A stretch of 64,000 nt of DNA from Vitrella brassicaformis CCMP3155. Lineage: Eukaryota; Protista; Chromerida. Each line of letters starts with the position of its first letter. Position 1 is the stretch's first letter. Position numbers and translations under genes: made by a program. Under the pieces are notes generated by a model. The model ran no database searches. It had not been told where the DNA came from and was given only the letters and a program-made list of their open reading frames with translations. Of this stretch, positions 34,747 through 43,105 are shown one piece after another. Location of the stretch: assembly GCA_001179505.1 (NCBI GenBank), contig CDMY01000317.1, positions 1 through 64,000 on the forward strand. Reading direction: 5' to 3'.

Positions 34747-35415
34747 TGAAATGATTGGGGGGGATGTGACAGGATGAGATGAGATATGTGTCGGCTTTAT
34801 CGGCTTTATGGGTGTGGTGGGACTGATGAGATGAGAGGCTGGCGGACGGACCTTTTTCTCGTGTGTTGGGGGAGGGAGAGTAGATACGACAGACAGAGGC
34901 GGGGAGGGAGTGAGGGAGGATTGAGAAGCGACAAGTGTCACCGTGCATCACGAATGTATGTCCAAACAATCGATGGATGTCCAAAACACGGGTAGTGGGA
35001 CAAAATACCCCCTGCACACACGCACACACACACACACACACAGACCGTCACCTACAGACATGACATGCATATGGCTACTCAGAAAGCGATAGCAGCGAGG
35101 GGCCTGGACAATCCCGACAGCGATAGATACTGTTTGTCTGTCTGTTCTTTCTGTAGGCTTCATTTGCAAGCAACCGAAGGCAGTGGAGGCAGTCAGTAAT
35201 GAGAGCATTGGCAAGTAAAGGAAAGGGAAAGGGAAAAGGCGAGAGATGGCCCAGAAAAATGCACACACCGCCACTGTCTGTCAGCTCGACACAGCCAGCC
35301 AGCCAGAAGCTCTCTGTACACTAACTACAGGTCCTCTCACTCCACCTGACCCCACCCCACCCTCACACCGTCTGTCTGTCTGTGTTCTGTCTGTCTGTCT
35401 GTCTAATCATGCCGT

Positions 35416-38400
35416 TCATTGCCTCCGCCTGTCGCCCCCACCTACCACCACACTACCCCTGTTCTCTCCCCTCAACCTCAAGCCAGCCAAGTCAACACTC
35501 CTCTCCTCATCTCTTCCAGCATCAGCATCACCATCAGCATCACCCTCCCCCTGCTGCGTGGGGGTGGGGGTGGAGGTGTGGGGGTATTTCCGTATAAGCT
35601 CCGTCCGCATTATGTGGTAGCCGTCCTGGAAGGCCCCCGACGTGCCCTTGAGGGCGTCCAGCGGCTGATCTGACCCCGGCCCACCACCTCCACCCATCAA
35701 GTCCAGCTTCCACTCTCGCAGCGCCATGAGCTTGCCTTCGAGCTTGTCGAGGGTGCGGGTCATTGCGGAGGGCAGCACCTGGTACTCGCTGGCCAGGGAC
35801 GAGATCGAGGGGACGGAAGGCCGCGATGCCACTGAGCCGTCGGGGAGCCGACGCAAGCCGTGGCGACGGCAGTAGAGGGCAGCTGCAGAAAGGGAAATGG
35901 ACAGACACGGAAAGATAGATCGATGGCAAGGGTGGGTTGGCTTCGTGTCCTCCTCCCGCCTTATTTATTCACCTTCCTCTGCCGGCAGTTGTTTGATGAG
36001 GTCCCACACTGCCTGGTCTGAGAAGAACTGCTCCATCACATTCGGCTGCGTCATCTGACCCACCCGACCACCACCACCGACACCACCGCCAGCCCCATCC
36101 GCCAGCAGCTCAGCCACGGTCAGCACCCTCACCCTCGCCCTCCTGACGTCGGCCTGCGGGTGCACGTCTGCCGGTGTCAGCTGCGACAGAGTGGGCTGCT
36201 CCACAACCGCCTTCATGAACTCGGCCGTCTCGAAGCCGTCTGGCGTGCCGGTGAACATGGGCTTGTCGGTGGAGCTGCTGATGCGCGTCTGGTAGATGTC
36301 CTTGAGCCGCCTGATGCCGATGCCCACCGTCTCGCCCAGCTCGTCCAACAGCACCTGGGAGCGCTCCAAGAGGTCCCGCACGACCTCCTGGATCTCCGCG
36401 CTGCTCACGTACGCCGCCATGAGGGGGCTGGCGCTGCTGCCCTTGGCCTGAAAATGCTCTGAGCGGGCTCGTGCAGTGAGGGACACCTCTGCGTCACTGA
36501 GGGCGAGAAGCATGTCGGTGACCTGGTCAAATGAGCCGATGGGCTGGCCGATCTTGTCTGTGAGGAGGGCGTAGTAGCCGTCCTCGAGCAGCGCCTTGAT
36601 GCGGGTGCGCTTGGTCTCTTTGCGGACTTTCTCGACCTTTGGAAGCTTGGAGTAGAAGTCCTCGTTGATGGGCACCATGCGGCGCTGCAGAGCCATCCGC
36701 TTCAGACCCTGCTGCACAAATGGCTGCGCATACCTGATACCAAGCCACACACACACACAGAGAGAGAGTCAGGGAAATGGTTCCTTCCCCTCCCTCCCTC
36801 TGCGCTTGTTCCAGTGCGTTCTGTCTGACCTCTCGAGTGTCGACTGTCGGTAGAGCCCCCTCGGCCCAGCGTAGCGCACGATGGCCTTGGTGAGGAAAGC
36901 CGACCCCAGCTCGTACAGCTCCATCCACTCCATCCCCGATGCCGGCGGGTAGGTCTCCTGGATGCGCGACGCTATCCGGTACACCACCGGCGCAAACTTG
37001 GCCTGGAACCGCATGATTGCGCTGTCGGCCGCACCGCGCTTACGAGCGAACAGCTCCCCCAGGTAGTCGGGGTACTTCTGGTGCAGCATGCGACCGAGTT
37101 CCTCCACAGGAAACGCCTCGCGCCGGTCGTCAGGCGATAGCGGCTCCAGTGCCGACGGCCTGAAGCGTGACCAGAGGTGTTGTTCGAGACGTGAGAGCTT
37201 CTCTTCTGGGGTGAGGCGGTCGAGTGGCTGTGCGGGGGGGCTGACGACGGCCAGTTCCTTCAGTGTGAGGGTGAGGAGGGGTCCGCTGAGCGTTCTGCTG
37301 ACAGATGATATGTCGGCGAGGAGGGATGCGGCGGTGCGGTTGGTGAGATTGCGATCGGGGAAGGCGTCGATCACCGACGGGATGATCGGGTTCACGTCGC
37401 GCAGCACCTCGTCCACCCACCTGACCACAACACGACAAAGCATTCCACACATGCACGGATCGCCATTGTGTGTGCACCCCCTTGGTCACCTACCTTCGGA
37501 ATGCAGGGTGCCACAGTCCAACAGAAGGGTCGTCCCTTGCCTCCTCGGGCAAAGCGGGGCCCTCGTAAGCCTTCCCATCGATGGGCGGTGGAAACCGCCT
37601 GTCGCCCTTCTGGCCCTCCAAGATGAACCTGACAATGGCGTCATACAGCGGGCGCATCTCGATCAGCTCGTCAACCAGCTCGGCCAGTGCCTGGCCAGGC
37701 ACCACGCCAAGACCCAGCAGACGGTCGTATGTCAGGTCCCGCCAGAAGAGCCACGGGGGAGGCGCCTCCAGCACATCGCCGCCAGGGTCGCTGTCTTCTG
37801 GGTGGAGCAGCAAGGGCAGTGGGGGGGCGATGACGGGCTCATCGAGGGGCAGGCGGCTGACAGGGTCACGGTTGAGCTCCTCCCACTTGTGGGCCGCTCC
37901 CGGCAGCACGCCGAACCCCCTCTGTCGGTCTTTGGCTGTCTGCGCCGCCTTCTTGAGCCGCGACCACCGCTCGATCTGCGCCGCCAGCCGAAAGATCTGC
38001 TCACTCTTGAGGCGAGACTTCCCCTTCGCTGCCGGCTCAACAAGCCGCCACACCTTCGCCCGATCACTGGTGGACCGCCCCTTGGAGCTCACTAGAGGCC
38101 GCTCGGGCTCGAGCACTTTCGTGACGTTCATCTCCTGCAGCTCCTCCACAGCTGCGCCAGGAAGCCCCGCCATCGCGGGCAGCGCACCCGGATCATCGAG
38201 GGGCGGCGGGCAGGGGGCAGCGCCGGCAATGATGCGGGCGATCATCTGACCCTGGTTGTAGTGGTCCAGTAGAGGGCCTGAGGGGTCCCGGTGGTCGTCA
38301 AGACCATAGTCGGGGTAAAGAGGGGCGGTTGGCGCCCTCTTCTTCTCGGCGGGCTCCAACAGACCGGCTGACGGGCCGCCCGACATCTCCTCTTTTCCAT

Positions 38401-40426
38401 CCTTGCTCTCGGCGGCACTGTCGACCACCTGCAGGCTTTGCTTCTGGTAGACCCGTGCGAGTGCCCCTCCCAGCCGCCGGCCGAAGTTCTTCCACACTTC
38501 CACCACATAGTAGCGCCTCATCCAGTAGAGCAGCGCCCGATTGAGGTCGTCGAAGATCGACACACCGCCTAGAGTGAGGTCCTTGCCCGGGGTGTAGGTG
38601 ACGGGCAGCGGGGCGGCGAGCGTCTGAAGGAATGTGTGGAGCTCCTTCTCGACTTGATGCATCGTCTTCTCCCGTGCAGACCGGTCCTCGTCTTCAGGCA
38701 GCGAGAACCGCGTCCGAAACGTCCCCATAGGCGTCGAGGATCGGCCATCGCTGGTCGTCTCCGTCACCGTCGACAGGGCCGACACAGCCGCACGCACTAA
38801 GGCCACCGACAAGACTTGCACCGCCCCTCCCAGCCGCACCTGCCTTTTCGCTGCCTCGGTGTCCTTCTCGTCCGTCTGCGCCTCGCCCCCGAATGCCGGC
38901 GGGCAGCTCTGCGCCGAGCCCATGATGACCTCCACAGCGTCCTCCACCAGCGGCTCTAGACGGGCGACCGACGGCAGTGTTCTCGCGACAGATGGGCCGG
39001 GGAGGAAGTCAGCCACGTTCTGGGCGATGGGCTGTCGGCCGTTGTTGCCGAAGGTCTCCCACAGCTCGATGAAGCCCTCCAGGAAGCCGGTGAGGATCTC
39101 CCTCGCCACTGGGATGGAGCCCTCACGTGCGTTGGATCGGTGGTCGAGCAGGTTGAGCCAGTCGGACTGCTCACGACGACTGAGGGGGCCGTCCAGCTCC
39201 GGTCGCCGGGCTGGATCCTTGTCTGTGTCTGTTGCTGACGAGTTGACAGCGACGGCAGCGGCACTAAATGCGTTGGTGGCCCTCTTTCTCGCCGATCTCT
39301 TCTTTGAAGAGGGCGGAGGGATGAGGGCATCACGGTCGAATGCAGATGGGGCATGATCGTCATCAGATGCGGGAGAAGCCGTCGGCGCCTGTCGTGTCGC
39401 CTTTTTGTCCTGCTCCTTGGCCAGTTTCTCCTCCGAGAAGGGCCACTTGACATCTGGCAGGAGGCGGAAGTGGCTGTCGACTTCGTTCCACCCGTACTTG
39501 GACATCAGACGCTCCCGTATCTCGTCAACAGAGGGGGGCCGCTCCGACTTCTCCTCCTCTCCCTGGGAACCATCGCCGCTGTCAGCAAGCTCGCCCCTCC
39601 TCTCTCGCGCCGACATGGTCACATCCGTCCCGCCATTCGCCCTGCCGTTCGCACGCACCGGCACTTCTGTAGCACCATCGTCTTCAGCAGCCTCCTCAGC
39701 CATCCTCATAGGCTGGTTACGCGGCCGCATCCACTCCATGTCAACGCCATCTGCAACGTCGGTATCCACTTCCGGCGGGTCGAGCACAGCGCTGCTCCCC
39801 TTCGCCGATGAGGCCAAGAACATCCCAATATCGCCGAATAAAGGCCGCATGCCATCACGCTCATTGCCGCGGTTTGGCAAAGGAAAGCTGCTGCCCAGCC
39901 AGTCTAGTGAGAGGTAGAGTGTGGTTGGGCGAGGGCGAGGGCGAGGGCGGGGAGAGGAGTGCCGCCATGGAATGCCGCGATGGTGTTTGGGCGACAGGCG
40001 AAGAGCGGCGGCCAGGGGCAGCATGACGTGGTCCCTCAGAAGACCCAGTGCAGCCAGCAGCGGACCCAATACGAGCAGCAGCTTCCACAGCCATGAGCGA
40101 AGACAGAGCTTCAGGCGTGTCTTGAGTGGCACTTGGGGTGCGGTGCTGATCCAGTATGCTCCTCGGCTCCCCTGCGGCTCTGGTGTCCAGTGCTGCAGTC
40201 GGCTAGGTGGAAGATGAGAGCACTGCGGAGGGTCGGAGGGCATCGAAGCTGCAGATCTCCGTCGAGCTGTACTTGTGGACTCCATCGAAGAAGCAGGTTG
40301 CTGAGAAAGACCAAGCTCGCGTTGCGAGCCGAGAAAAATCCTTGCCCTTGCTGACGATGAAGGCCTTTGCGTGAGGTACGGAGTGGCCACGACTCGTTCA
40401 TCACTCAGCTGCCATCCTTGATCCAT
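35416..40426 (-). CDS. Sigma-70-family RNA polymerase sigma factor-like protein (~1,583 aa, 4 exons), probably plastid-targeted
   Basis: Exons 40426-37494, 37420-36830, 36733-35973 and 35882-35416 (4,752 nt, phases 2/2/1). Region 2: FAPVVYRIAS...MEWMELYELGSAFLTKAIVRY..PRG...ST..RYAQPFVQQGLKR. Region 3: LLDELGETVGI...ISSSTDKP. Region 4: LIKQLPAEEAALYCRRHGL...SISSLASEYQV...LDKLEGKL. The start ATG is uncertain. Confidence 0.75.
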
Positions 40427-40722
40427 CAGCTCGTGAGCGACATTCTCTCTGGGCAGACTCAGTCTGAGTGTACACAGACCTGCGGCTTTGATTCGAATCA
40501 ACACGCCGCTTAGAAGCTCTCGTCCGACGGTGAGTGAGAATGCGATTAACTCGCCGCGACGCCATCATGTGATTTGTGTCTTGATGTGATTGCATTGCGC
40601 TGTGCAGGTGATTCAGGCTCATTATTGACAGGCAAGCATGCGCACGACACGTGCACCAGGCGCATGCACATTTCTTCGCTGTGTGTGTGCGGTGGATGCA
40701 GCGGTGTGGGTGTGTTTGAGTG

Positions 40723-43105
40723 ATGTCTGAGGCTTACGGCCTCGGCGCGCCCTCTGCTGCCACGGCAAACCGTTACAACGGCGACGCAGGTACACCACAC
40801 ACAAATCTATAGGACACACCCCACACACAAGCACCATCCCGCCATGTGACTGCGTCTATGCTGTTGTGCGTTTACTTGTGATTGCGGACGACGTAGATGA
40901 GGAGCAGCGTGGCGGTGGCGGACCAGCAGAGGAAGACGATCGCAGCGGCATTGACAGCGGTGAGTGACTGACCAATCATGGTATACAGACCAACCGACAC
41001 ACCAGCAGCACGGCACACTGATGTGTTCTCTGTCGGTGCGTCGCCTGTGTCTGTGGTCAGACGAGCAGAAGGAGGAGCATCACGGCGGGGTGGCCGACGA
41101 GATGGCCGATGAGGAGGGAAGTGATAGCGAATCGGTGAGGCACTCATTCTGTCATTCACGAACACAACACGAGTCAATGCGACTCGATGTCCGGCACGTT
41201 TTCCCTTGCCCCTTTGTGGTGTCGGGATGCCATGCAGGAGGATGGCGATGGGGCTGGTGCTGGCGACGACATGAACGAAGACGACAGTGAGTTGTCAGAT
41301 GAGTACAGTGACTCATCCGACGACGGCTACGAGGAAGAAGGTACGCCTGACAGACAAATGTGACAATGCTAAACACACACGCACTCACTGTGTGCCTCCC
41401 TCGTGTGGTGGCTCTGTGCACTGCAGGTCATCCTGTGGTGGCGGCCACTGGCGTGACTGTCCCAGACGGCTGTGTGGGCCCCACTGACATCGAGGCTCGC
41501 TTCCCCCTCGGCACCAACGAGGCCACCAAGCAGCTGGGGCTGGGTGTCATCGGCCGGACCATTATCGACCCACGCCAAGTGACCGCCCTCATCCGGCAGA
41601 ACGGCGCCGACCCAGACGTCAAGCCTCGGCTGCGGAAGAAGGGCAGCAAGCGTCCTGGGTTCGCCCACTCGCTCTACGAATACCCGCTGCTCTGTCTCGC
41701 CATTGACAACCAGACGGACTACACCGTCACGACCATCGTAGCAGGCAGTGGTGCTCGCCGTTTTGTGGCCCTGCCAAAGTGGTCGTCTGCTGGGCTGCAG
41801 GCGGAGATCCTCACCGCACTGCTCGACGGAGGCGCCGACATCAACGCAACAGACGACGATGCCGTCAGCAAGCCCTTGTGGGTGGCGATCGCACTGGGCA
41901 ACCAGACGGCCTTCGACATCCTGACGGCGCGTCAAGACATCGACCTGCGCCCACCAGGCCCACACATGGTGATGGAGCTGCCCCGTCCCCTGCGTCCGCC
42001 TCCCCCCCGGTATCTGGAGGTGCTCATGTCGATGTATCGGCAAGTCACCGCACGAGACCCCACCCTCGCCACCGAACACGGCAACGGCCACAACCTGGTG
42101 CACATGGCAGCCATGGTGGCGGGGGGACAGTATCCCCAGTCCTTCATCGACGCCTACCTCGACCTCATCACGGCGAACGGCGCCGACATGACGGCAGTGG
42201 AGGGCGATGGATGGACGCCATTGCACTACGCGGAATCGTGTGGCTCTCCCCACGTGGCCGACTACCTCTGCCGCAAGGTGCCCGCTGCTGACGACATCAA
42301 CAGACGGACCCACTACGGTACACTCTTCGGCAACACGCCCCTCGCCCTCGCTGCCGAGGAGCTCGATCGCCGCACCCAACGGCTACAGCACCCGCACACG
42401 CCCGAGAACACCAAGAAGGAGTATCGCGCCAAGATTGACGAGTACAGGCAGATCATCCATTCGCTGCTGCGGGCGGGGGCCGATATCAACAGCATCTCCA
42501 CAGCCACAGAGTGGGACCGCTGTGGCCGCCAGCTGGTGCTGGCCGAGTATGCGACAATACTCAACGAGCTGCCCGCTGCCGTGACGTCGGCTGTCAGCGC
42601 CGCCCTCGCCCCTCACCGCTCCCTCGCGGCCCTCCTGACCCCCCAGCTAGCCGTCGGCCCGCAGGAGGCCGCCATCTTCGGCTGGCGCATCGCGTCATAC
42701 CTCTTCGACATGGATGCCGCCCAGGAGGCCGTCAGTGAGGCCGGTGTGCGGCACACCGACATGGCCCACCGTGTGTGTGCGGCAGCGGAGCACTTCGTGC
42801 GCTCGGCAGTGTACCAGGCCAGCAGCAACAGGGAGGTGGTCGGCGGGACGGCCGATGTGGGCAGCCAGGTGGTGCGTGTGCCGCAGCTGCAGTGCTTTGT
42901 GGTGGGCGGTATGGGTGGCCGCAAGATGGAGCTGCGTGAGATGGTGCAGCGGGCAATCCTGGACGAGGCGGCCCAGTGGGGGCTGGCGGGGGAGATCGGC
43001 AACGGCTTCAGCAGGGATGTGCCCGCGGTGGTGTGGGGGGCGGTGGGGTGGGTCGAGAGGGGGCGGGACGGCAGGAAGACGTTCAGGTCGCTGCGGATGA
43101 CGTGA
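40723..43105 (+). CDS. Ankyrin-repeat family protein, copy 2 (5 exons)
   Basis: Exons 40723-40789, 40897-40959, 41061-41134, 41238-41340 and 41427-43105. Motifs LLDGGADIN, WTPLHYA, NTPLALAA and LLRAGADIN. Confidence 0.85.

What the first reader, a model, noticed from the sequence alone, without database searches (positions are those of the whole stretch)
35416..40426. Giant, cryptic sigma-70 factor: candidate nucleus-encoded regulator of plastid transcription
Seen: four ORF-track fragments splice in phase into ~1,583 aa. The last ~550 aa follow sigma-70 order and spacing. Region 2.1-2.2: FAPVVYRIASR...GMEWMELYELGSAFLTKAIVRY, compared with LRLVVSIAKKY..RGL.F.DLIQEG.IGL.KAV.KF. Region 2.3-3.0: PRG...ST..RYAQPFVQQGLKRMALQRRMVPI, compared with RG.KFSTYA.WWIRQAI.R.IA.Q.R.IRIP. 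Region 3 HTH ends SSSTDKP, compared with SL..P. Region 4: LIKQLPAEEAALYCRRHGL, compared with L..L..RE..VL..RFG+, followed by an HTH. Known: red-lineage plastids use a bacterial-type RNA polymerase with host-encoded sigma factors, and an apicoplast sigma (ApSigma) was recognised only recently because of its divergence. Inference: this is a chromerid plastid sigma factor, about 2.5 times the size of E. coli RpoD, and a possible link to ApSigma. It is invisible in the ORF track because introns split regions 2 and 4.
Basis: partly seen in the sequence, partly recalled or inferred. Interest (0 to 1): 0.9.

Follow-up and report, generated by a model that had tools for sequence, protein, structure and literature searches.

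The report
Giant divergent sigma-like protein of Vitrella
An expressed nuclear gene of the alga Vitrella brassicaformis encodes a very large protein with no detectable relatives, and its tail is a hard-to-recognise relative of bacterial sigma factors, so it may be a further regulator of plastid transcription, though where it works is unproven.

Summary
Four minus-strand ORFs join in phase through three GT-AG introns into 1,583 aa. Transcript contigs from two runs carry exactly those junctions. The gene is already modelled publicly as CEM02069.1 / A0A0G4EUZ2 of Vitrella brassicaformis (1,522 aa, "uncharacterized"), with the same splicing and a later start.

The sigma-70 reading is partly supported.
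- Pfam and NCBIfam find no sigma domain, even on the spliced protein.
- Sigma profiles I built all hit one place, residues 1122-1216, which corresponds to region 2 (best E about 1e-5; 0 of 2,001 shuffles reach it; hhalign P 2e-5).
Region 3 is unresolved.
- Protein-language-model neighbours are Sigma70_r2/r3/r4 families. They remain r4/r3 families when region 2 is left out.
- A no-alignment AlphaFold model is poor, yet about 17 of its top 50 PDB matches appear to be sigma chains.

No homologue exists in 1.8 billion representative proteins. The claimed link to ApSigma is unsupported, because the published Vitrella ApSigma homologue is a different gene (CEL93836). Plastid targeting is inferred only.

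The scan holds unverified notes of other divergent sigma-like genes elsewhere in this genome, and a sister note on this same stretch.

The parts
35416..40426 (-). The public model CEM02069.1 starts at ATG 40243. The first ATG inside the longest transcript contig is at 40285.
   Evidence: the transcript contig ends at 40303
37494..40426 (-). Exon 1, residues 1-977. No recognisable domain and no homologue. It is continuous in the transcript, so it holds no further intron.
40007..40105 (-). The strongest hydrophobic segment, residues about 108-140 (Kyte-Doolittle up to 1.98); one weaker segment lies near residue 541-545. It is followed by a basic S/P/R-rich stretch of about 57 aa. It could be a recessed signal peptide or signal anchor plus a transit-peptide-like region.
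   Evidence: the targeting role is inferred, not tested
37421..37493 (-). Intron 1, 73 nt, GT..AG
36830..37420 (-). Exon 2, residues 978-1174. Its end carries the region 2.1-2.2-like sequence.
36734..36829 (-). Intron 2, 96 nt, GT..AG, containing a (GT)n run. It interrupts region 2.3, between the equivalents of T429 and Y430.
35973..36733 (-). Exon 3, residues 1175-1428
35883..35972 (-). Intron 3, 90 nt, GT..AG. It interrupts the region 4.1-like helix.
35416..35882 (-). Exon 4, residues 1429-1583 plus the stop codon
36610..36990 (-). Sigma region 2-like module (sigma-2 domain), residues 1122-1216, spanning intron 2. It aligns to E. coli RpoD about 385-470 with 20 of 70 aligned residues identical.
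36259..36609 (-). Zone where region 3 should lie, residues 1217-1333. Neither is significant.
35713..36021 (-). Candidate region 4 (sigma-4 HTH), residues 1413-1485, spanning intron 3. It has a 4.1-like helix pair, a 9-aa insertion, and then an HTH at residues 1454-1480.
   Evidence: hhalign P 0.023-0.027; Pfam MarR HTH E 0.0015-0.011; pLDDT 76-90 without alignment cover; Sigma70_r4 language-model neighbours

Best explanation
This is an expressed nuclear gene of Vitrella brassicaformis (CEM02069.1). It encodes a 1,522-1,583-aa protein with no detectable homologue, whose last ~480 aa hold a very divergent sigma-70-family module of ~370 aa (residues 1122-1485) followed by a ~100-aa tail.

What is shown:
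- The gene structure, splicing and transcription.
- Significant similarity of residues 1122-1216 to sigma region 2. This is the domain that binds the beta-prime clamp helices and reads and melts the -10 element.

What is probable:
- A sigma-4-type helix-turn-helix at residues 1413-1485.

What is unresolved:
- Where region 3 lies.
- The role of the ~1,100-aa N-terminal part.

What is inferred:
- After entering the secretory route through the hydrophobic segment at residues ~108-140, the protein reaches the plastid.
- There it binds the plastid-encoded bacterial-type RNA polymerase through region 2.1-2.2 and directs it to a promoter class of its own.

Residue pattern in regions 2.3-2.4 (E. coli numbering):
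- Kept: Y425, S428, T429, Y430, A431, Q437 and R441.
- Changed: W433 to P, W434 to F, T440 to K.
- P followed by a hydrophobic residue (aromatic in most) at 433-434 is the normal state of SigB/SigF/SigG-type sigmas. The change therefore points to altered specificity, not necessarily to loss of function.
For: Gene, splicing and expression.

Region 2:
- The best BLAST HSP against E. coli RpoD is region 2 (RpoD 363-469). Smith-Waterman against shuffles gives P about 0.003-0.006.
- My 22-sequence HMM of groups 1-3 gives E 6.6e-6 and 11.8 bits at residues 1122-1216. None of 2,001 shuffles exceeds 3.7 bits.
- The 102-sequence HMM gives E 1.3e-5.
- The viral-contig sigma HMM gives E 4.6e-5 at the same place.
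- hhalign gives P 2.1e-5 and probability 77%.
- The best of 452 real GC-rich ORFs of the window reaches only 5.9 bits, and the two exon halves of this gene are among the top scorers.

It covers 56 of 62 profile columns, and 8 of 300 shuffles reach its score.

Language-model neighbours:
- P0001:215-620 scores 0.95, and every named family shown among its hits is Sigma70_r2/r3/r4.
- P0001:335-610, which excludes region 2, gives 72 of 100 hits in the Sigma70_r4 set, plus a diatom Sigma70_r3 cluster.

Fold: about 17 of the top 50 PDB matches of the alignment-free AlphaFold model appear to be sigma chains (inferred from entry titles and chain letters), with a sigma-28 chain on top.

P at position 433 occurs in 20 of 68 bona fide sigmas in my viral-contig set, among them the plasmid SigF and SigB/F/G sequences added to it.
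Against: - Pfam, NCBIfam and PHROGs give no sigma hit on the spliced protein.
- phmmer against the PDB gives none.
- phmmer of exon 3 against 1.84 billion representatives finds only the protein itself.
- Regions 3 and 4 are not individually significant, and MAFFT proposes another layout.
- The single-sequence model has pLDDT 38.
- The better model (pLDDT 64) was fed a sigma alignment, so its sigma matches (Z about 7, E no better than 1.5e-3) are circular.
- No orthologue exists, so there is no conservation evidence.
- Targeting is untested, and the hydrophobic segment lies 47-107 aa (the start codon is uncertain) from the N-terminus.
Confidence: 0.6

Rival explanations
1. It is a sigma-derived module that no longer acts as an initiation factor. 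It could be a pseudo-sigma that binds the plastid polymerase or DNA as a regulator or tether, perhaps membrane-anchored through its N-terminal hydrophobic segment. Alternatively it is a protein working outside the plastid that has merely kept a sigma-like helical domain.
For: - Core-binding residues of region 2.2 are altered: Q406 to E, E407 to L, N409 to S, M413 to T.
- Region 2 carries 5- and 3-aa insertions, and region 3 is not recognisable.
- The protein has a ~1,100-aa N-terminal extension with no recognisable domain.
- It is an orphan, with no conservation in any other species.
- The scan's follow-up of another gene in this genome (s1-218422, unverified here) also described a sigma-like part in a composite protein whose place of action is unproven.
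Against: - The gene is transcribed and correctly spliced, and the long ORF is intact.
- Y430, Q437 and R441 are kept.
- P433 is normal in SigF-type sigmas.
- A sigma-4-like HTH is probably present.
Confidence: 0.25
2. The resemblance is chance. On this view it is an unrelated helical nuclear protein with a generic helix-turn-helix.
For: - All curated libraries are silent.
- Scores are only 9-12 bits.
- The case was selected after the fact from a whole genome.
- The language-model calibration was not measured for parts of proteins.
- Z about 7 is common for helical models.
Against: - Six different sigma profiles put their best hit on the same ~90 residues, in the same register.
- There were 0 of 2,001 shuffles at or above the observed score, and real-ORF controls stay 5-6 bits lower.
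- A region-4 match lies collinear with it.
- Two non-overlapping parts of the protein both retrieve sigma-70 sub-domain families by a method that uses no alignment.
- Sigma chains are enriched among the matches of an alignment-free model.
Confidence: 0.12
3. It is the chromerid orthologue of, or an evolutionary bridge to, the apicomplexan ApSigma.
For: Both are long nucleus-encoded proteins with an N-terminal extension ahead of a C-terminal sigma part (PMC10334805, section 5).
Against: - PMC10334805 names CEL93836 as the Vitrella homologue. It was found by BLAST with E. coli sigma-70, and this protein could not be found that way.
- No apicomplexan protein is retrieved by any search.
Confidence: 0.03

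Closest known systems
Bacterial sigma-70 family (groups 1-3); reference E. coli RpoD (NP_417539.1, L001)
   Same: - The region 2 layout is the same: helix 2.1, loop, helix 2.2 (G..L.K A...Y/F), an RG-Y..ST-YA motif, and the long 2.3-2.4 helix ending in R..P.
- 20 of 70 aligned residues are identical.
- A four-helix region-4-like HTH lies downstream.
   Different: - It fails the curated Pfam and NCBIfam models.
- It has insertions of 5 and 3 aa in region 2 and 9 aa in region 4.
- About 130 extra aa lie between regions 2 and 4.
- Regions 1.1 and 1.2 are not detectable.
- It has ~1,100 extra N-terminal residues and a ~100-aa low-complexity tail.
- It is eukaryotic, nuclear and intron-bearing.
SigB/SigF/SigG-type (group 3) sigma factors and their phage-contig relatives
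   Same: Position 433-434 is P followed by a hydrophobic residue, aromatic in most ('YAQPFV' here; 'FAIPYI' and 'FAVPTM' in SigF and SigB/F/G). The language-model neighbours are mostly Bacillota and phage sigmas of 240-290 aa.
   Different: An HMM built only from P-type sigmas scores lower (4.7 bits) than mixed profiles (9-12 bits). No subgroup assignment is therefore justified.
ApSigma (PF3D7_0621000) and its Vitrella homologue CEL93836 (PMC10334805)
   Same: They are nucleus-encoded, with a long N-terminal extension and a presumed partnership with the plastid-encoded polymerase of a red-lineage plastid.
   Different: Those proteins were found by BLAST with E. coli sigma-70 and have 'highly conserved' regions 2 and 4. 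This protein cannot be found that way and shows no detectable similarity to them in database searches.
Plant and algal nuclear SIG genes (plastid sigma factors)
   Same: The presumed role is the same, and a diatom Sigma70_r3 cluster is among the language-model neighbours.
   Different: Those are typical group 1/2-like sigmas of roughly 400-700 aa (from memory) that Pfam recognises. This protein is 2-3 times longer and Pfam does not detect it.

Membership tests
Sigma-70 family (Pfam clan of Sigma70_r2/r3/r4; NCBIfam sigma models) | Passes a curated Sigma70_r2, r3 or r4 model | tested here: not met
   There is no sigma family at E up to 10 on the exon pieces or on the spliced P0001. HMMER filters drop most hits above E about 0.1 for a 24,736-model search, so this excludes only P below roughly 4e-6.
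Sigma-70 family | Significant, correctly registered similarity to region 2 (sigma-2 domain) in a targeted test | tested here: met
   E is 6.6e-6 to 4.6e-5 with three broad profiles. hhalign gives P 2.1e-5. None of 2,001 shuffles reaches the score, and real-ORF controls reach at most 5.9 bits against 10.9-11.8.
Sigma-70 family | Region 4 helix-turn-helix collinear with region 2 | tested here: inconclusive
   The best downstream hhalign hit is at residues 1413-1481, with P about 0.027 from shuffles. Also: MarR-type HTH at E 0.0015-0.011, Sigma70_r4 language-model neighbours, and four helices with pLDDT 76-90. A rival HTH-like site lies at residues 1304-1323.
Sigma-70 family | Region 3 between regions 2 and 4 | tested here: inconclusive
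   hhalign gives P 0.24-0.26, and there are two competing placements.
Sigma-70 family, groups 1-2 | -10 melting and recognition residues Y430, W433, W434, Q437, T440, R441 | tested here: not met
   Y, Q and R are kept. W433 is P, W434 is F and T440 is K. P433 is the group-3 SigB/F/G state.
Sigma-70 family | Sigma-2/3/4 fold | tested here: inconclusive
   The single-sequence AlphaFold model has pLDDT 38. Its Foldseek hits are not significant, but about 17 of the top 50 appear to be sigma chains. The alignment-fed model has pLDDT 64 and superposes on sigma-2 at rmsd 2.5-4 A with Z about 7, but that test is circular.
Sigma-70 family | Binds core RNA polymerase and confers promoter-specific initiation | not testable with these tools
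   This needs biochemistry or genetics.
Plastid-targeted protein of a complex red plastid | N-terminal signal peptide followed by a transit peptide | tested here: inconclusive
   One hydrophobic segment at residues ~108-140 is followed by a basic S/P/R-rich stretch. It lies 47-107 aa (depending on the start codon) from the N-terminus. No predictor was available.
ApSigma clade | Groups with apicomplexan ApSigma and Vitrella CEL93836 in a phylogeny of regions 2-4 | not tested
   Those sequences could not be fetched. No apicomplexan protein appears in any search.

The most novel reading that the evidence does not exclude
Vitrella carries a lineage-specific class of giant sigma-like proteins that curated domain models do not recognise, and this is one of them. 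On this reading the protein has a membrane-anchoring N-terminus and a SigF-like P433 region 2. It either gives the plastid polymerase a promoter class of its own or acts as a non-initiating decoy or tether for it. If so, the count of 'one sigma per species' in the apicomplexan and chromerid lineage is an artefact of BLAST-level searching. The 'missing' sigma factors of piroplasmids could then be similarly hidden.
Probability: 0.2. Interest if true: 0.7.

Novelty: new variant of a known kind. Interest (0 to 1): 0.45.

Why it matters
Transcription in apicoplasts and chromerid plastids is poorly understood. A 2016 review (PMC5404108) stated that no apicoplast sigma factor had been identified. The 2023 ApSigma paper (PMC10334805) reports one sigma per species and none in piroplasmids.

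A second, expressed sigma-like gene in Vitrella that BLAST and Pfam both miss would show that the sigma repertoire of this lineage is under-counted. It would also give a concrete candidate for localisation, ChIP and polymerase-binding tests.

Its value is limited for three reasons:
- It has no orthologue, so it cannot yet be used to find hidden sigmas in parasites.
- Several nuclear sigma genes are the norm in photosynthetic algae.
- Its function and location are still inferred.

Tried and rejected
Searches that found nothing:
- Pfam, NCBIfam and PHROGs on the exon pieces and on the spliced protein gave no sigma hit.
- phmmer against PDB sequences gave nothing relevant.
- Homologue searches with exon 1, the middle part and the sigma-like part found nothing. 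Self was missed only because the cluster representative is the 699-aa fragment.
- phmmer of exon 3 against 1.84 billion representatives found only the protein itself, plus two repeat-driven artefacts (P0002, P0003).
- A metagenome scan for relatives found none.

Profiles that were too narrow or uninformative:
- A gammaproteobacterial RpoD-only HMM gave 0.8 bits.
- A six-sequence full-length HMM (four cyanobacterial sigmas plus Listeria and Rhodococcus) gave no region 1.2 match.
- I tested whether the protein belongs to the SigF-like P433 subgroup. The P-type-only HMM scores lower than mixed profiles, so I rejected this as an assignment. It remains useful in showing that P433 occurs in working sigmas.

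Structure:
- Single-sequence AlphaFold gave pLDDT 38.
- The alignment-fed AlphaFold model is circular, so I use it only as a compatibility check.

Literature: supplements of PMC10334805 are not held as text, so I could not compare residues with ApSigma or CEL93836. No paper mentions CEM02069 or A0A0G4EUZ2.


Full report
1. OBSERVATION

On the minus strand, four ORFs lie head to tail: 37490-40504, 36769-37452, 35965-36756 and 35416-35856. The introns are 73, 96 and 90 nt, and each join keeps the frame. Joining the exons from ATG 40426 gives 4,752 nt = 1,583 aa with one terminal stop.

Public reads settle the splicing:
- A 5,029-nt transcript contig of run X6 lies on 35300-35882, 35973-36731, 36828-37418 and 37492-40303 with contiguous record coordinates.
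- Contigs of run X1 bridge the same three gaps.
- Run X3 carries the unspliced stretch in one piece, so it is genomic DNA.

Exon 1 is continuous in the transcript, so it holds no further intron.

2. IDENTITY OF THE GENE

A phmmer search of exon 3 against 1.84 billion representative proteins returned one true hit, P0001.

Its cluster also holds P0004 = CEM02069.1 / UniProt A0A0G4EUZ2. This is a 1,522-aa protein labelled 'unnamed' or 'uncharacterized', from Vitrella brassicaformis CCMP3155.

The gene is already modelled correctly in public annotation; only its function is unannotated. No paper in the library mentions either accession.

3. IS IT A SIGMA FACTOR?

3a. Curated and database tests are negative
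- Pfam, NCBIfam and PHROGs give no sigma family, either on the pieces or on the spliced protein. The only hit is a sub-threshold MarR-type HTH at spliced residues 1454-1479.
- phmmer against all PDB sequences shows no sigma.

However, a library-wide scan is blind to similarities with P above roughly 1e-5 to 1e-6, so I ran targeted tests of the one pre-stated hypothesis.

3b. Targeted tests support region 2
I fetched E. coli rpoD, 80 gammaproteobacterial RpoDs and 16 diverse sigmas of groups 1-3 from plasmids. I also fetched 80 group-1/2-like sigmas from metagenomes and 80 SigF-related sigmas from viral contigs.

- Pairwise BLAST of the spliced C-terminus against RpoD puts its best HSP on RpoD 363-469, which is region 2. 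Smith-Waterman against 500 shuffles gives P about 0.003-0.006.
- A 22-sequence mixed HMM of regions 2-4 hits residues 1122-1216 on profile columns 14-100, with 11.8 bits and E 6.6e-6 for a one-sequence search. None of 2,001 shuffles, nor the reversed sequence, exceeds 3.7 bits.
- The 102-sequence HMM gives E 1.3e-5.
- The viral-contig HMM gives E 4.6e-5.
- The six-sequence full-length HMM (four cyanobacterial sigmas plus Listeria and Rhodococcus) gives E 1.4e-4.
- hhalign gives P 2.1e-5 and probability 77%.

All of these use the same register. As a real-sequence control I scored all 452 ORFs of at least 80 aa in the window (64,168 aa, same GC bias). They reach at most 5.9 bits, and the unspliced exon-2 and exon-3 ORFs of this very gene are among the top scorers.

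Region 2 similarity is therefore real at about P 1e-5 per protein. I note that this equals only about 0.2-0.4 expected false hits had a whole ~23,000-gene proteome (gene number from memory) been screened. It needs corroboration.

3c. Corroboration
(i) Region 4. It covers 56 of 62 columns, and 8 of 300 shuffles reach its score. This is weak alone, but it is collinear with region 2.

(ii) Protein-language-model neighbours, a method that uses no alignment.
- Residues 215-620 of P0001 give top scores of 0.95. Every named family shown is Sigma70_r2, r3 or r4, from Bacillota and phages.
- Residues 335-610, which exclude region 2, give 72 of 100 hits in the Sigma70_r4 set, plus r3 clusters that include a diatom one, at 0.89-0.91.
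- The tool warns that these calibrations were not measured on parts of proteins.

(iii) Fold.
- AlphaFold without an alignment is poor (pLDDT 38), and no Foldseek match is significant.
- Even so, the top PDB match is a sigma-28 chain, and about 17 of the top 50 of 350,542 chains appear to be sigma factors (inferred from entry titles and chain letters).
- A second model was fed a MAFFT alignment with 41 sigmas. It reaches pLDDT 64, and its residues 47-117 superpose on sigma-70 383-448 at 2.5 A. All of its top 50 Foldseek matches appear to be sigma subunits or sigma-containing polymerase complexes. That result is circular, and I use it only as a compatibility check.
- One feature of that model is not circular. 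This is the sigma-4 topology.
- The stretch that MAFFT had aligned to region 4 (residues 1278-1328) folds instead as one long helix plus one short helix, at pLDDT 59-71.

3d. What remains open
- Region 3 is not significant (P 0.24-0.26).
- Region 1.2 is not detectable.
- The spacing differs from sigma-70. There are 5- and 3-aa insertions in region 2, the second one at the exon 2/3 junction. About 130 extra aa lie between regions 2.4 and 4.1. A 9-aa insertion precedes the HTH.

4. RESIDUES

In the hhalign register:
- Region 2.2 keeps G408, L412, K414 and A415. It changes Q406 to E, E407 to L, N409 to S and M413 to T.
- Regions 2.3-2.4 keep R423, G424, Y425, S428, T429, Y430, A431, Q437 and R441. 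They change W433 to P, W434 to F and T440 to K.

The sister note s1-212244 reads this as 'rewritten' promoter recognition. My alignments add a different point. P433 followed by a hydrophobic residue (aromatic in most) is the ordinary state of SigF and SigB/F/G-type sigmas, and of 20 of 68 sigmas in the viral-contig set. It is therefore not a sign of inactivation.

A P-type-only HMM does not score better than mixed profiles (4.7 against 9-12 bits). No subgroup can be assigned.

5. THE REST OF THE PROTEIN

- Residues 1 to about 1100 have no domain hit and no homologue anywhere. A metagenome scan with P0001 also found nothing.
- One hydrophobic segment (residues ~108-140) is followed by a basic S/P/R-rich stretch. 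This could be a recessed signal peptide or anchor plus a transit-like region. That is inference only.
- The start codon is uncertain. The longest transcript contig begins at 40303, which favours ATG 40285 or 40243. A separate low-depth contig covers 40351-40533.

6. COMPARISON WITH THE LITERATURE

PMC10334805 identified ApSigma by similarity search with E. coli sigma-70. It reports exactly one homologue in V. brassicaformis, CEL93836. The present gene is a different protein, and one that such a search cannot find.

I found no evidence that links it specifically to ApSigma. PMC5404108, written in 2016, stated that no apicoplast sigma had been identified.

The scan holds unverified notes of further divergent sigma-like genes elsewhere in this genome. 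I did not examine them.

7. VERDICT

I put the chance that this is a genuine but extremely divergent sigma-70-family module at about 0.8-0.85. I put the chance that it works as a plastid sigma factor at about 0.5.
- The ApSigma link and the 'hidden by introns' explanation are not supported.
- It is best described as a new variant of a known kind. Interest is moderate.

Noticed in passing
window 35370-35404: A (CAGA)n-type microsatellite lies just downstream of the stop codon. Word depth there is 10-40 times that of its flanks in all four runs, so the repeat is multi-copy in the genome. A 1-nt length variant sits at 35385.
   Followed up: no
window 36739-36775: A (GT)n run lies inside intron 2. 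The read-laying tool dropped rows there, which is why that junction appears only in the table of contig pieces and not in the table of joints.
   Followed up: partly
window 40351-40533: A separate low-depth contig of run X6 lies upstream of the main transcript contig's end (40303), leaving a gap at 40304-40350. It could be a longer 5' UTR, an upstream start (ATG 40426) or another transcript.
   Followed up: no
window 41360-43105 (+): A 581-aa ORF on the other strand, just upstream of this gene, has ankyrin-repeat-like motifs (for example '...GADINATDDD...', '...TPLHYAESCG...'). It is probably the neighbouring, divergently transcribed gene.
   Followed up: no
window 37088-38095 (+) and other long antisense ORFs: Long ORFs (up to 335 aa) run antisense to exon 1. 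The stretch has 62-66% G+C, so these look like composition artefacts, not genes.
   Followed up: no
spliced residues 1304-1323 (window about 36289-36348): A second HTH-like stretch ('LDELGETVGIGIRRLKDIYQ') matches the region 4.2 consensus about as well as the downstream site does. It may be the region 3.1 HTH, a duplicated HTH, or chance.
   Followed up: partly
L178-L257 (viral contigs): Among 68 sequences (64 distinct sigma-like genes on viral contigs plus four plasmid sigmas added for reference), the residue at the E. coli W433 position is W in 41, P in 20 and Y in 5. The 'wedge' tryptophan is thus often replaced in phage-borne sigmas.
   Followed up: partly
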